A stretch of 64,000 nucleotides of DNA. Origin: Octopus bimaculoides. Lineage: Eukaryota. Position 1 is the first letter of the stretch; the number at the start of each line of letters is the position of its first letter. Position numbers and translations under genes: made by a program. The stretch is from the NCBI RefSeq assembly GCF_001194135.2, contig NC_068999.1:54728940-54792939 (forward strand), in the 5' to 3' direction. Positions 10,880 to 62,500 of the stretch are shown piece after piece. Below the pieces are notes generated by a model that was given only the letters and a program-made list of their open reading frames with translations, ran no database searches and had not been told where the DNA came from.

Positions 10880-10913
10880 CACTTCTCCTTCGAAAGGTGA
10901 AATTTCCAGGCAT
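10880..10913 (-). CDS. Alternative first coding exon MPGNFTFRRRS|G (phase 1)
   Basis: Minus: ...ttggtcATG CCT GGA AAT TTC ACC TTT CGA AGG AGA AGT G|gtaagt with a consensus donor. Same exit phase (1) as the 18955-19040 exon. Preceded by about 700 nt of SINE-free, UTR-like sequence. Confidence 0.6.
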
Positions 10914-11700
10914 GACCAAGTAATGTGCTTGAGAGAAGAAAGTGTAATAGAGCTGAGTAAATTGTTGTCAGTGCGTTACTAAGTCATAATTGTCAGCTGA
11001 TGATGCTGGTTGATTGTGAAGACACTTGAACTACAGAGAAATAACAATAACAACAGCAGTGGCTATAATACCGGCAACTGTTGTTACTGCCGATGATGAT
11101 GATGATGATAGTTGTAACAGTGGTGGTGGTGGTGGTGGTGGTTAGTTGTATGCTATCCGTGCCAATAGGATGGAAGTGAAACAAGAGGAAAACATGTTTT
11201 AATATAGTAACTGCTGCTGCTGCTGTTGTTGATGCTGCTACAGTTGTCAACAGCAGACAATAGGGAAGAACTGTGCACACAAGTTCAGAAAGTCTTCGCT
11301 AAAACTGCCATGGACAATGCCAATTGTTTAGTGAACAAGACAGAAGACGACAAAACCATCCAATAGAAACTTGATCCAAAATTTTCGTAACTGACAAAAA
11401 AAACCCAGCAAAGACAAACTTTGGAAGCTGGACGACACCACAATCCGTTAACAGGCTGAATGGAGGGTGTGTGTGAATGTGTGTGTGTGTGTGAGTGAGT
11501 GTAAGTGAGAGGAGAGAGGTGGAGACGAGAAGCTGTGGTTTGAGTTTTTTGTTTTGTGTGTCTTAGTAAAACGACAGAGTAGAAGCTAGCAGAGTGGTTT
11601 ACTGGTCAAGAGAAATTATAACAAGCTTACACTAACGCACTACCACACACTGCCAAGTAGCTTCATGAGTCACATCCCATAGAAGGCCACAGTGGTACTA
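10914..11700 (-). promoter_or_regulatory. Putative internal promoter and long 5'UTR for the MPGNF exon, with AP-1 site and uORFs
   Basis: Unique CpG-containing sequence free of SINEs; ATGAGTCAC (AP-1 core at 11666-11672); GA/GT repeats upstream on the minus strand; short uORFs (ATG ACT TAG at 10987; MAVLAKTF* near 11311). Confidence 0.4.
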
Positions 11701-59560: not shown

Positions 59561-59576
59561 TTTCCCTTGAGGGTCT
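59561..59576 (-). other. Strong splice acceptor; possible 16-nt non-coding mini-exon or start of a longer UTR exon
   Basis: ttttctttccccttctttttcttcag|AGACCCTCAAGGGAAA|gtaatg on the minus strand. Confidence 0.3.
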
Positions 59577-62500
59577 CTGAAGAAAAAGAAGGGGAAAGAA
59601 AATTTGGAAGCAAATAGAAGAAAAAAATGGTAAGTCTCAATCCAAGTGAACCACCATCATCATTCTCACTATTACAGTCGTTATTATTATTGCAATTATT
59701 TTTGTTATGTGCATCAGCATCAATAATTGCAGAGTGCAGGAAACAAAAACAAAAATTAGGTAAAGAATGAATCTAAAAACTGATCGATTTGTAAATTGTA
59801 TGCAAGATAGGTTTTAAAAGGTTTTCTATTTTTTATTTTCATTTTATTTTATCTATTATGACTTTTTTTTTTGAGGTTCTCTTTGTTTTCTTTGTGTTTT
59901 ACCTTAAAGGCAGAATAAGTGCTGGGTTTTGTAAATCTCAAGGAGCAGAGTATAGGGTAGGGGAGACCCACTTGCTTTATTACTGTCCTATTTATATGGC
60001 CTGTTAAACTGGAAGATTGACCTCACTGTAATCTAAATAGTTGTTTAGCCCCCGGGTCAGTACTGATTGAAATGTCCAATTTTCAAAGGTGTTCAAGTCT
60101 TGATCAGCCTGTATTACTTCAAGGAATGGTGTTTCTAGGACTACATTATCCAATTAGCTGCTACTTCTAGCAAATTAGGCGACTATGAAGTGACCCCCTC
60201 ATTGCCTTACTGTGATACAAGTAAGAGAGTTTTTAGTTTTGAAGCCTGATTAAGAAGATTATAAATTGAGTTTTCTTCATTTTAATAGCCCAGAAATGGT
60301 TTCCAAAGAATTCTAGAAACAATCACCTACCAGTTTCCAGGCTTTTACAGTCTTGCATTATGTCTCTCACAATCGTTCTCCTTAAGAGGCAAAATCTGCC
60401 AACCACTCAAAGCTATGTAAATGATCAATTATCAAGGAGAAACCAAGCCAAATCAGACTGGAACCTGGTGCAGCTCTCTGGCTTGCCAGCTCTGGTCAAA
60501 CCATCTAACCCATGCCAGTATGGAAAACGGATGTTAAATAACAATGATGATAATACACACATGTACACACATGATGGGCTTCTTCCAGTTTCTATTAAGC
60601 TAAATCCACTCACAAGGTTTTGGGTAGCTTAGCACTATAGTTGAAGACACTTGCCCAAGGTGCCAAACAAATGGGAATGAACCCAAAATTACATGGTTGA
60701 GAACAGTACTTCTTAATCCACACAACTATTCCTGGACATATGACAATAGTAATCAATGATGAAGATAATGATAATGATGATGATGATAATGGCCACGGAC
60801 TATTTCTTGCATTAGAATAAAGGAAGGTTTAAGAATCAGATCAAAAGAAGTGTCAGTCTGATAACAGAGAAGCAAGAGTTCAAGATCAGGAGATATTTGA
60901 AAAGACAAGATTCATACTGGAGATGAAAAATGACAGAAAAACAAACACGAGCAAACAAGAACAACAAAAAGAAAAACAAAGCTCAGAAAACAATAGATAT
61001 TATACTAGGAGACAGGGCCATTCCATAGAATAATCAGATTTAACAATTCAATTAAAACTGGCAGCCATAGATGTGTTAAATAGATTTGTATCTTTGGTAG
61101 GATCTGCATCTTCAGCAATAAAACTACCACCACTACTGGCACCACCACCACCATTGCTGCTGATGTTGCAGCAATTTGTTGTAAGCAGTTGTGATACATC
61201 AATGCAACAGCTGCTATATGGTCACTTGGCCTGCTAGAAATAGCAGCCAAATGTCCCTCAAACCAGTCCTGTTTTATAAAGGGGCACATTGGATAATGCT
61301 GTCCAGAGTACACTGTCCCAGAAGAAAAGGCAGTGTGGTCATGTCTGGACTGACTTTTAATTCATAGGCATGTTTGCTTTAAGATGGCAAATTAGCCAAG
61401 TTCTTAGATCCGATAGATTGCCCTATGGTATACTTTGCCTTTCATCCTTTTGGGGTCAATAAATGAAGTACCAGTTCTGTACTGGAGTTGTATTCATCTC
61501 TTTTTCTCTTTTTCCTTTTTTTTTTTGTTTCTGTCTATTTCTCTCTCCTTTTTGTGTGTGTTTTAAGAAATCAGCTGTGGCCAACCTTCGCAAGAGTGTG
61601 CTACACCTCACTTAAAAATTACCTGAGACATGCCATATATCAATCACAACAGTACTTCTTCAACTCCACCAGGTGTTGAAGGACCAAACCAAAGCACTAT
61701 CTAATCTATCAGGGATAATCTGGGGTTAAACAACAACAACAACAACAACAAATTATAGTTTTACAGGAAATGGCTATCTTTTGTTCTGTACTCTTTGGTC
61801 CAAAGAATTTATACGAGTTTGTGATTCTCAGTGTAATGGGATCTTGTTGTCTGTGCAACAGGATCCTGCACTTTAAGATGGGATAGCTTGGGAATCGGTA
61901 ATATTTATGTCTTTCTCAATGGTATTAACAATAAAGGTGAATTGAATTTTCATCAAAATCTTCACTGAGTTGTTCTATGGTGCTTAACAATTCACCTAAA
62001 GTCAGGCCCCCAGTTTCAAATTAATCATGCATTATCTTGTGGCTTTGAGATTTAAATATTGCGATTCCTTATTTTCAGAATAACATTGTAGGGTAGGTGT
62101 GAGAGGCCAGATATAGCCAGTTTGAACATGAAAGAAGTAGAATATTAGGGCCAGATATGGCCGGTTTAAACATTAAAGGGCTAATCTACCACCCAAAAAC
62201 AGGAACAGTTCCTCAGACAGGTTTCTACATAATTTCCCCACTAACAAAATTTCATTTGCAAGGCTTTGGTTGAACCAAAACTTTAGTAGAAGAATATTCT
62301 TGTTCAAAATATCATGCAGTGGAATTGAACCCAAGACCATGTAGGAATAAGCTGAACATTTAAACTACACAGCTACACAGCAAAGCCAGGCAAAGCTATT
62401 CCATAAACTTTGACCTGAAAAATCTGCAATGGTATAGGTGTGCAATTCTTCCTCATGGCCACTCTCAGGCTATTATCATTTGTGTTCTCTGCCCTACCTT

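What the first reader, a model, noticed from the sequence alone, without database searches (positions are those of the whole stretch)
10880..59600. A PAK-like kinase gene with a 50-kb cassette of alternative promoters and interchangeable N-termini
Seen: one well-supported PAK-like exon (19040-18955; phase 2 in, phase 1 out), with candidate exons whose phases fit two entry points. Phase-2 exits (50406, 34118 or 34126 plus the 17-nt microexon, 30833) join EVNMPLENK in frame. Phase-1 exits (59128 plus 56313, 34122, 10880) would bypass it and join the missing CRIB exon directly. Established: PAK N-termini carry the adaptor-binding PxxP motifs and the basic patch that control localisation. Inference: octopus may diversify PAK targeting through alternative first exons (basic FRRRS, Cys-rich, PxxP-containing). 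Phase matches can arise by chance, so this is a model to test.
Basis: partly seen in the sequence, partly recalled or inferred. Interest (0 to 1): 0.7.

Follow-up and report, generated by a model that had tools for sequence, protein, structure and literature searches.

The report
Octopus PAK kinase: alternative first exons
The window holds the 5' part of the Octopus bimaculoides PAK signalling-kinase gene; two of the proposed alternative protein starts are real, conserved and already in public annotation, while the other proposed mini-exons are chance matches.

Summary
The minus-strand exon 19040-18955 is real. It is 100% identical to residues 20-47 of O. bimaculoides RefSeq 'PAK 3 isoform X3', and its splice sites and phases are conserved in other cephalopods and a mussel-like contig. 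Exon 30963-30833 encodes the Cys-rich MATQHC...NNM(R) start of isoforms X1/X2 and joins exon 2. Exon 10913-10880 encodes MPGNFTFRRRS(G) of isoform X5/X6, skips exon 2 and joins the CRIB exon. Both are conserved in a 109-kb genomic locus labelled Argonauta hians. The second is also in cuttlefish annotation and in a cuttlefish RNA contig, with 5 synonymous and 0 non-synonymous changes. The other candidates (50406; 34118/34122/34126 plus microexon; 59128 plus 56313) have no support. Phase-matched ATG-to-GT pairs occur by the hundred on both strands. The 50.4-kb ATG and donor are absent in the related genome, and the rest have no match there. The canonical first coding exon with the Nck-type PPAPPLR motif is not in the readable window, nor is the CRIB exon. 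No exon touches an assembly gap. Verdict: ordinary alternative-first-exon usage, partly guessed correctly and already annotated. A conserved CpG-rich domain at 46-53 kb may be a further promoter.

The parts
18955..19040 (-). Exon 2 of the PAK gene (86 nt). It encodes EVNMPLENKPLPKEPDSKEEKKKMKVPK, which carries the second proline motif and a basic stretch. Its internal ATG at 19030 is the annotated start of isoform X4.
   Evidence: 100% identical to O. bimaculoides XP_014779007.1. Splice sites and phases are conserved in L008, L001 and the mussel-like L004. There are 0 non-synonymous and 5 synonymous changes against L008.
30833..30963 (-). Coding part of alternative first exon 1b: MATQHCQQRYKTAAATKWCLSCVSTAVHRICWISGNKELHNNM plus AG. 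It splices to exon 2. Its 5' end (TSS) was not determined.
   Evidence: Identical to the N-terminus of RefSeq isoforms X1/X2. An in-frame stop lies directly upstream. The ORF, frame and phase-2 donor are conserved in L008 at about 42055-42171, with pN 0.28 against pS 0.75.
10880..10913 (-). Coding part of alternative first exon 1c: MPGNFTFRRRS plus G. It skips exon 2 and splices to the CRIB exon, which lies outside the window.
   Evidence: Identical to RefSeq isoform X5/X6 in O. bimaculoides and O. sinensis, and to cuttlefish CAE1233744.1. Cuttlefish RNA contig L005 shows the junction. L008 carries MPGSFTFRRRS with a GTAAGT donor. There are 5 synonymous and 0 non-synonymous changes against L005.
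31472..31535 (-). Conserved non-coding block about 540 nt upstream of the exon 1b ATG. It holds the window's only CTGATTGGTT (inverted CCAAT, or Y-box) at 31507-31498 and is a candidate promoter element for exon 1b.
   Evidence: 81.5% identity to L008 40448-40512, colinear with the other anchors. Promoter function is inferred, not shown.
46000..53000 (.). Domain that is not CpG-depleted (observed/expected 0.55-0.90 against a background of about 0.2). It contains a chain of conserved non-coding blocks between 51079 and 49908 and is a candidate internal promoter or regulatory region.
   Evidence: CpG profile; syntenic CpG-rich domain in L008 at 15-24 kb; colinear conserved blocks.
50406..50467 (-). 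It lies inside a conserved non-coding block and is not a conserved coding exon.
   Evidence: In L008 the ATG is absent (GAGATTTTG) and the GT donor is absent (CTCCGCCTGA). The indels are 7, 3 and 5 nt, and conservation continues past the 'donor'. No RefSeq isoform begins MQSRKSW.
34118..34191 (-). No support.
   Evidence: The donors are 4 nt apart and so give every phase. There is no DNA or peptide match in L008 and no annotated isoform.
56313..59173 (-). No support. The pair straddles the 393-N gap.
   Evidence: There is no match in L008 and no annotated isoform. The gap lies between inverted SINE-like copies.

Best explanation
The window is the 5' part, on the minus strand, of the single group I p21-activated kinase (PAK) gene of Octopus bimaculoides. 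The gene spans about 109 kb. Within the window lie part of the long first intron, alternative first exon 1b (30963-30833), common exon 2 (19040-18955), alternative first exon 1c (10913-10880) and part of the next intron.

Transcripts start at different first exons. A first exon has no acceptor site, so it cannot be spliced into a transcript that started further upstream. Each mRNA therefore carries one N-terminus. Five kinds of N-terminus follow, and steps (a) to (d) are shown by annotation, conservation and, for (d), RNA contigs.
(a) The canonical exon 1a lies outside the readable window. It encodes MSDDPEKPPAPPLRLASN, with the Nck-type SH3-docking motif, and joins exon 2.
(b) Exon 1b replaces that motif with a 43-residue Cys/His-containing peptide and also joins exon 2.
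(c) Transcripts with non-coding 5' exons start translation at the ATG inside exon 2.
(d) Exon 1c encodes MPGNFTFRRRS, lies downstream of exon 2 and joins the CRIB exon directly. This removes both proline motifs and the exon 2 basic stretch.
(e) A further exon, MDLFHDF..., lies outside the window and also joins the CRIB exon.

Inferred: the isoforms keep the CRIB/autoinhibitory, PIX-binding and kinase modules but differ in adaptor docking and membrane targeting. Also inferred: each first exon has its own promoter. A conserved inverted CCAAT box lies about 540 nt upstream of exon 1b. The conserved CpG-rich domain at 46-53 kb is a candidate promoter for the non-coding 5' exons.
For: Identity. Exon 2, exon 1b and exon 1c peptides match O. 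bimaculoides RefSeq isoforms X3, X1/X2 and X5 at 100%. The H5 and N41 residues are those of O. bimaculoides rather than O. sinensis. The full-length product has PBD (92.5 bits) and Pkinase (250 bits) domains. The gene range is 108,780 bp on a 55-Mb contig of GCA_001194135.2.

Independent annotation. The same five N-termini are annotated in O. sinensis. The MPGNFTFRRRS form is annotated in Acanthosepion pharaonis.

Transcripts. Cuttlefish RNA contigs L005 (MPG form) and L006/L007 (canonical form) are 99-99.8% identical from the first base of the CRIB exon onward. Their 5' parts are unrelated.

Conservation. In L008, where introns are otherwise unalignable, all exons lie in the same order with conserved donors and phases. 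Codon counts: exon 2 has 0 non-synonymous and 5 synonymous changes. Exon 1c has 0-1 non-synonymous and 3-5 synonymous. The exon 1b core has pN 0.28 and pS 0.75.

Regulatory hints. A conserved Y-box block lies upstream of exon 1b. The CpG-rich domain and its conserved blocks are syntenic in both genomes.
Against: No O. bimaculoides RNA reads, CAGE data or RefSeq mRNA coordinates could be inspected. For this species the isoforms therefore rest on NCBI gene models plus conservation. Transcription start sites are not mapped, so 'alternative promoter' is inferred rather than shown. Exon 1b has a weak start context (T at -3) and evolves much faster than exon 2. It has 21 non-synonymous differences in 34 codons against L008, so its protein-level role is less secure. 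The species labels of L008 and of the Logan runs come from record names and were not verified. No experiment addresses function.
Confidence: 0.85

Rival explanations
1. One reading: a 50-kb cassette in which at least six mini-exons (50406; 34118/34122/34126 with a 17-nt microexon; 30833; 59128 plus 56313; 10880) are all genuine alternative coding first exons.
For: Two of the members are real. The 50.4-kb candidate lies in a conserved, CpG-rich region that could be a promoter. RefSeq lists three accessions each for the X3 and X4 proteins, which implies further 5' exon variants that were not mapped.
Against: Phase-compatible ATG-to-GT pairs are at chance density on both strands. The 50.4-kb ATG, frame and donor are not conserved in L008. 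The 34-kb, 56-kb and 59-kb candidates have no DNA or peptide match in L008. None of their peptides begins any isoform in O. bimaculoides, O. sinensis, O. vulgaris, A. hians or A. pharaonis. If 50406 spliced to exon 2, its ATG would be in frame and the longer ORF would be expected to appear in annotation.
Confidence: 0.05
2. The alternative N-termini are products of annotation or transcriptional noise. On this view exon 1b is really a 5'-UTR exon whose upstream ATG happens to be in frame, and the functional proteins are only the canonical form and the exon 2 ATG form.
For: The exon 1b ATG has a weak context (T at -3) and the exon 2 ATG has a strong one (A at -3). Exon 1b diverges quickly. It matches no Pfam family. 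No octopus RNA contig with this N-terminus was found.
Against: In L008 the exon 1b ORF, an ATG, the reading frame (one 3-nt indel in the core) and the phase-2 donor are all retained, although the flanks are unalignable. Non-synonymous change is well below synonymous change (21 differences over 76 sites against 15 over 20), and C-x2-C-x5-H-x2-C-W is invariant. For exon 1c the noise reading is untenable. All 11 residues are identical from octopus to cuttlefish with 5 synonymous changes, and there is an RNA contig.
Confidence: 0.12
3. The 46-53 kb region, including the reader's 50.4-kb 'exon', is an internal promoter with a non-coding first exon, or an intronic enhancer cluster. It would drive the transcripts that translate from the exon 2 ATG (isoform X4), not a coding first exon. 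This complements the best explanation rather than replacing it.
For: CpG observed/expected is 0.55-0.90 over 7 kb against about 0.2 elsewhere. A syntenic CpG-rich domain is present in L008. Seven colinear conserved non-coding blocks lie at 51079-49908. X4 has three accessions, implying non-coding 5' exon variants.
Against: There is no transcript or TSS evidence. No conserved donor site was found next to the blocks. L008 has several other CpG-rich patches, so the signal is not specific there. The region could be an enhancer or an unrelated unmethylated island.
Confidence: 0.4

Closest known systems
Octopus bimaculoides RefSeq PAK gene models: XP_014779005.1 (X1), XP_014779006.1 (X2), XP_014779007.1-9009.1 (X3), XP_014779010.1 (X4), XP_014779013.1 (X5), with counterparts in O. 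sinensis (XP_036367093-7100)
   Same: Identical. The window encodes the X1/X2 N-terminus, exon 2 and the MPGNFTFRRRS N-terminus at 100% identity.
   Different: Nothing differs for the confirmed exons.
Group I PAKs of other animals (human PAK1-3, Drosophila Pak, Mytilus coruscus CAC5411955.1)
   Same: The order of modules is the same: an N-terminal PPAPPxR Nck-type motif, a second proline motif followed by a basic stretch, CRIB/PBD, a PIX-binding proline segment and a C-terminal kinase (domain roles from PMC10017488). The 86-nt exon 2 with the same phases is present in a mussel-like genomic contig.
   Different: In the unidentified invertebrate ORF fragments P0004, P0032, P0037 and P0060 the PLPKEPDS motif and the CRIB lie in one exon. 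The Cys-rich and MPGNFTFRRRS starts were seen only in cephalopods among the hits retrieved. The exon 2 ATG is Leu in the mussel sequence.
Mammalian PAK3 splice variants a, b, c and cb
   Same: One PAK gene yields isoforms that differ in the regulatory N-terminal half (PMC10017488).
   Different: The PAK3 variants insert internal cassette exons in the autoinhibitory region. Here the variation is in mutually exclusive first exons upstream of the CRIB. It removes or replaces SH3-docking motifs rather than altering autoinhibition.
Clustered variable-first-exon loci (protocadherin and UGT1A type)
   Same: Several first exons are each spliced to common downstream exons.
   Different: In those loci the variable exons are tandem paralogues in large arrays. 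Here the first exons are few, short and unrelated in sequence, and they use two different downstream acceptors. The 'cassette' analogy does not hold.

Membership tests
Group I p21-activated kinase (PAK1-3 / Pak) | CRIB / p21-binding domain N-terminal to the kinase | tested here: met
   The full-length product of this gene (P0244) matches PF00786 PBD at 92.5 bits, residues 87-143. The exon encoding it is outside the window.
Group I p21-activated kinase (PAK1-3 / Pak) | C-terminal STE20-type Ser/Thr kinase domain | tested here: met
   PF00069 at 250 bits, residues 273-524 of P0244. It is outside the window.
Group I p21-activated kinase (PAK1-3 / Pak) | The window's exon belongs to that gene | tested here: met
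   tblastn gives 28/28 identity of 19039-18956 to the RefSeq protein. Exons 1b and 1c are also 100% identical. The weak match to human PAK1 alone (E = 2.8) would not have sufficed.
Group I p21-activated kinase (PAK1-3 / Pak) | N-terminal PxxP motif for Nck-type SH3 adaptors (PPAPPxR) | tested here: met
   EKPPAPPLRLAS is present in isoform X3. The encoding exon is absent from the readable window. Actual Nck binding is not testable with these tools.
Group I p21-activated kinase (PAK1-3 / Pak) | Central non-canonical proline segment that binds PIX | tested here: inconclusive
   PPPITTRPDKTKSIYTKP is present in all isoforms on inspection. It resembles human PPPVIAPRPEHTKSVYTRS, which I recall from memory. 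Binding was not tested.
Alternative first exon / alternative promoter gene | Mutually exclusive 5' exons joined to shared downstream exons in mRNAs | tested here: met
   RefSeq isoforms in two Octopus species show it. Cuttlefish RNA contigs L005 and L006/L007 diverge exactly at the CRIB-exon acceptor. No O. bimaculoides reads were available.
Alternative first exon / alternative promoter gene | A separate transcription start site and promoter for each first exon | not testable with these tools
   No CAGE or 5'-RACE data were available. The hints are a conserved inverted CCAAT block upstream of exon 1b and a CpG-rich conserved domain at 46-53 kb.
Alternative first exon / alternative promoter gene | The alternative exons are under coding constraint | tested here: met
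   Exon 1c has 0-1 non-synonymous and 3-5 synonymous changes in three comparisons. The exon 1b core has pN 0.28 against pS 0.75, with frame and donor kept. The counts are small.
Clustered variable-first-exon array (protocadherin / UGT1A type 'cassette') | A tandem array of paralogous variable first exons | tested here: not met
The N-termini MSDDPEK..., MATQHC..., MPGNFTF... and MDLFHDF... share no similarity. Only two lie in the window.

The most novel reading that the evidence does not exclude
The two cephalopod-conserved alternative N-termini may be functional targeting modules that make PAK independent of SH3 adaptors. The Cys/His peptide (invariant C-x2-C-x5-H-x2-C-W) could act as a lipidation or metal-binding membrane anchor replacing the Nck site. 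MPGNFTFRRRS could be a phospho-regulated basic tag (an RRxS site) replacing both proline motifs and the basic stretch. Expression might be driven from separate promoters, including a CpG-island promoter in intron 1.
Probability: 0.2. Interest if true: 0.5.

Novelty: already known. Interest (0 to 1): 0.25.

Why it matters
For the scan, this case shows that a reader can recover real tiny first exons (34 and 131 coding nt) from raw sequence. It also shows that splice-phase fit alone cannot separate them from hundreds of chance ATG-to-GT pairs. Conservation in a diverged genome separated them cleanly.

Biologically, the result is a tidy but ordinary example of alternative first exons. The isoforms keep the Cdc42/Rac-binding, PIX-binding and kinase modules, while the Nck-type motif, the second proline motif and the basic stretch are swapped or dropped. 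The MPGNFTFRRRS start is conserved from octopus to cuttlefish, which suggests a real adaptor-independent PAK isoform in coleoids. That may interest PAK specialists and people working on the cephalopod nervous system, but the isoforms are already in RefSeq and no open question turns on them.

Tried and rejected
It was too weak to settle identity.

2. The 28-aa exon was too short for the search for homologous proteins. A chimeric 61-aa query returned only ORF fragments of 107 aa or less.

3. The search of protein representatives with the 31-aa window translation returned only two short genomic ORFs, P0121 and P0122. I first took P0122/L004 and P0131-134 for decapod cephalopods. The cluster look-up showed they are Mytilus-like, and I corrected this.

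4. Searches for the canonical exon (regular expressions for PPAPP, tblastn, Smith-Waterman with cuttlefish and L008 sequence) found nothing in the readable window. Synteny estimates place it anywhere from about 58 kb to about 72 kb. It may be in the 393-N gap or beyond the window, and this is undecided.

5. The look-up of encoding contigs found no record for isoforms X3, X4 and X5. It returned no DNA for the O. bimaculoides, O. sinensis and O. vulgaris genes because each is longer than 100 kb.

6. The third protein search, for partial octopus transcripts with other N-termini, found none.

7. Pfam found no family for the Cys-rich peptide.

8. Literature searches found no paper on octopus PAK or on PAK alternative first exons.

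9. I considered that the CpG-rich patch at 57-58 kb might mark the canonical promoter. I judged this unlikely, because that stretch is flanked by inverted SINE-like copies that also flank the gap. Other long phase-2 ORFs (46805-46618, 39088-38931) were checked and are not conserved.
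Full report
CHECK OF THE OBSERVATION.

The window is AT-rich (GC about 0.36) and has four N-runs: 3005-3014, 27479-27488, 55523-55568 and 57876-58268. The minus-strand exon 19040-18955 is exactly as described. It has acceptor ttttgcag| and donor |gtaaag and is 86 nt long. One base completes a split codon at its 5' end and one base opens a split codon at its 3' end. It encodes EVNMPLENKPLPKEPDSKEEKKKMKVPK.

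The other claimed exons are short ATG-to-GT stretches, and they are present at the stated coordinates. None of the claimed exons touches a gap. The 10-N gap lies in the intron between 30833 and 19040, next to an (AT)n array. Colinear matches to a related genome on both sides (31.5 kb and 19.2 kb) support order and orientation across it. Upstream of about 51 kb the only colinear match is a weak low-complexity tandem-repeat one at 55.4-55.9 kb. The two upstream gaps therefore cannot be checked. The proposed 59128/56313 pair straddles the 393-N gap.

IS THE PHASE FIT MORE THAN CHANCE? No.

On the minus strand there are 2,749 ATG-to-GT[AG] pairs without an intervening stop. About 510 distinct donors are in phase 2 and about 517 in phase 1. 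The plus strand, which serves as a control, has more. With strict GTRAG donors, 22 phase-2 pairs still lie between 19041 and 59600. The three donors at 34126, 34122 and 34118 are 4 nt apart, so they provide every phase, and a free 17-nt microexon can repair any remaining mismatch. Phase therefore carries no information here, and other evidence is needed.

IDENTITY OF THE GENE.

Invertebrate PAK fragments share PLPKEPDS...KKK just before the CRIB. A padded query retrieved 'serine/threonine-protein kinase PAK 3 isoform X3 [Octopus bimaculoides]'. This protein begins MSDDPEKPPAPPLRLASNR|EVNMPLENK...KVPK|[30 protein letters not shown].

tblastn gives 28/28 identity for exon 2. The gene product has PBD (92.5 bits) and Pkinase (250 bits) domains. 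The gene spans 108,780 bp on a 55-Mb contig of GCA_001194135.2.

ANNOTATED ISOFORMS.

The 90% cluster of this protein holds six O. bimaculoides and six O. sinensis isoforms.
- X1/X2 begin MATQHCQQRYKTAAATKWCLSCVSTAVHRICWISGNKELHNNMR, followed by exon 2.
- X3 is the canonical form.
- X4 starts at the Met inside exon 2 (MPLENK...). It has three accessions, which implies non-coding 5' exon variants.
- One form begins MDLFHDFIAVNLPCFRIPIN and joins the CRIB exon.
- One form begins MPGNFTFRRRSG and joins the CRIB exon.
- One truncated form starts after the CRIB.

tblastn places the X1/X2 start at 30963-30833 and the MPGNFTFRRRS start at 10913-10880, both at 100% identity. Joining 30963-30833 to 19040-18955 reproduces the annotated sequence. 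The canonical exon, the MDLFHDF exon and the CRIB exon are not in the window.

CONSERVATION AND TRANSCRIPT EVIDENCE.

L008 is a 109-kb genomic locus from GCA_054771915.1. Its protein is labelled Argonauta hians, and I did not verify the label. It carries the whole gene in 89 kb. Introns do not align. The only colinear matches are exon 2, exon 1c, a block upstream of exon 1b, a block upstream of exon 2, and blocks near 50 kb.

L008 has the following exons in the same order:
- the canonical exon at 10001;
- a homologue of exon 1b at about 42055-42171, reading MPTNTAAAAIHYCVSCLSAIVHRMCWSYTDNKELHIAQ plus AG|GTAAAC;
- exon 2 at 53213-53298;
- MPGSFTFRRRS|GTAAGT at 58223;
- MDLLHDF... at 85672;
- the CRIB exon at 87199.

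Nei-Gojobori counts are as follows. Exon 2 has 0 non-synonymous and 5 synonymous changes. Exon 1c has 1 non-synonymous and 3 synonymous changes against L008, and 0 and 5 against cuttlefish. The exon 1b core has pN 0.28 and pS 0.75, with C-x2-C-x5-H-x2-C-W invariant. The numbers are small but consistent with coding constraint. The constraint is strong for exon 1c and moderate for exon 1b.

Cuttlefish-labelled records (Acanthosepion pharaonis CAE1233744.1) and an RNA contig (L005, run SRR8281679) carry MPGNFTFRRRSG|NKIAKI. RNA contigs L006 and L007 carry the canonical form. The two classes are 99-99.8% identical from the CRIB exon onward and unrelated before it. This is direct transcript evidence for alternative 5' exons in a related species.

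Genomic contigs L001-L003 show exon 2 with conserved splice sites and almost only synonymous change. A Mytilus-like contig (L004) has the same 86-nt exon and the same phases, but Leu in place of the internal Met.

THE UNSUPPORTED CANDIDATES.

The 50467-50406 stretch lies in a conserved block. In L008, however, the ATG is GAGATTTTG and the donor is CTCCGCCTGA. The indels are 7, 3 and 5 nt, and similarity runs on past the supposed donor. The block is conserved as non-coding DNA, not as a coding exon.

The 34-kb, 56-kb and 59-kb candidates have no DNA or peptide match in L008. No isoform in any of five annotated cephalopods begins with their peptides. Two longer chance ORFs in phase 2 (46805-46618 and 39088-38931) are likewise not conserved.

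WHERE IS THE CANONICAL EXON?

It is not in the readable sequence. Scaling from colinear anchors puts it near 58-60 kb. Scaling from total gene length puts it near 72 kb. It may therefore lie in the 393-N gap or just beyond the window, and I cannot tell which. The gap lies between inverted copies of a SINE-like repeat (57236-57310 and 58447-58521, 98.7% identical). That fits an assembly break in repeats.

REGULATORY HINTS (INFERRED).

CpG observed/expected is about 0.2 over most of the window but 0.55-0.90 across 46-53 kb. L008 has a syntenic CpG-rich domain at 15-24 kb. Seven colinear conserved non-coding blocks lie at 51079-49908. This could be an internal promoter for the transcripts with non-coding 5' exons, or it could be an enhancer cluster.

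A conserved block lies about 540 nt upstream of the exon 1b ATG (31535-31472). It holds the window's only CTGATTGGTT, an inverted CCAAT box. Its role as an NF-Y-type promoter element is an assumption from my own general knowledge.

HOW IT MOST LIKELY WORKS.

Each mRNA starts at one first exon. A first exon has no acceptor, so it is not spliced into a transcript that starts further upstream. All isoforms share the CRIB/autoinhibitory region, the PIX-type proline segment and the kinase.
- The canonical form has the Nck-type motif and the exon 2 proline/basic segment.
- X1/X2 swap the Nck-type motif for a Cys/His peptide.
- X4 lacks only the Nck-type motif.
- The MPGNFTFRRRS and MDLFHDF forms lack both proline motifs and the exon 2 basic stretch.

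The review PMC10017488 states that the N-terminal proline sites bind NCK1/2 and GRB2 and recruit PAK to membranes. It also states that PAK3 makes four splice variants through internal inserts. The likely consequence here is isoform-specific recruitment, which is inferred and untested. RRRS fits the R-R-x-S kinase consensus (my own knowledge). The weak context of the exon 1b ATG (T at -3) leaves room for leaky scanning to the exon 2 ATG (inference).

COMPARISON AND NOVELTY.

Membership in group I PAK is met on every testable feature. The architecture is ordinary alternative-first-exon usage. It is not a protocadherin-like array, because the first exons are few, unrelated in sequence, and use two different acceptors.

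The confirmed parts are already in RefSeq for two Octopus species and in the cuttlefish annotation. I found no paper on them. The rating is 'already known' and the interest is low.

First, the MPGNFTFRRRS start is conserved and under constraint from octopus to cuttlefish. Second, the Cys/His motif is conserved in exon 1b. Third, a conserved CpG-rich domain lies in intron 1.

Noticed in passing
window 46000-53000 (conserved blocks 51079-51036, 50591-50557, 50552-50479, 50430-50388, 50362-50329, 50234-50153, 49981-49908): A 7-kb domain is not CpG-depleted (observed/expected 0.55-0.90 against about 0.2 elsewhere). It contains a chain of non-coding blocks colinear with L008 17.7-20.5 kb, where a CpG-rich domain also sits. 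It may be an unmethylated internal promoter or an enhancer cluster in PAK intron 1.
   Followed up: partly
window 31472-31535 (minus); Y-box at 31507-31498: A conserved non-coding block about 540 nt upstream of the exon 1b ATG holds the window's only CTGATTGGTT (inverted CCAAT). The ATTGG core is kept in L008 40448-40512.
   Followed up: partly
window 57236-57310 and 58447-58521: Two inverted copies of a SINE-like repeat, 98.7% identical, flank the 393-N gap. Related copies occur at 1631-1840 and about 44.7 kb, and many times in L008. The CpG-rich patch at 57-58 kb lies between them.
   Followed up: partly
window 23048-23123 (minus): There is a tRNA-like sequence (Rfam tRNA 35 bits; ARAGORN calls tRNA-Ser GGA, 76 nt) inside the intron. 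From my own knowledge Ser tRNAs carry a long variable arm, so 76 nt looks short and it may be a tRNA-derived repeat or a pseudogene. I did not inspect the arm.
   Followed up: no
window 55414-55944 and L008 12242-12714 / 14689-14969: Tandem repeats rich in GTGGTGG/CAGCAG (54-nt and 29-nt units) surround the 46-N gap. They have a weak match (65-74% identity) at a roughly colinear position in L008.
   Followed up: no
proteins P0204 and P0257 (Acanthosepion pharaonis) compared with RNA-derived P0258 and P0259: The cuttlefish gene models end in ...ATMETHNSLIQLCRKATIWSW, whereas the RNA contigs end in ...SLVPLIMAAKEAQKSH, as all other PAKs do. The last exon of the deposited models is probably mis-annotated.
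   Followed up: no
L004 (JGI metagenome 3300042712 contig), 640-730: A Mytilus-like PAK exon has the same 86-nt length and the same phases as octopus exon 2. In the unidentified invertebrate ORF fragments P0004, P0032, P0037 and P0060 the same motif is fused with the CRIB in one exon. The intron after this exon may therefore be specific to molluscs or to a wider lophotrochozoan group.
   Followed up: partly
window 19030 (ATG inside exon 2): The internal Met that starts isoform X4 is conserved in octopus, L008 and cuttlefish but is Leu in the mussel sequence. The two residues before it vary (EVN, EPN), which hints that this start codon may be a cephalopod acquisition.
   Followed up: partly
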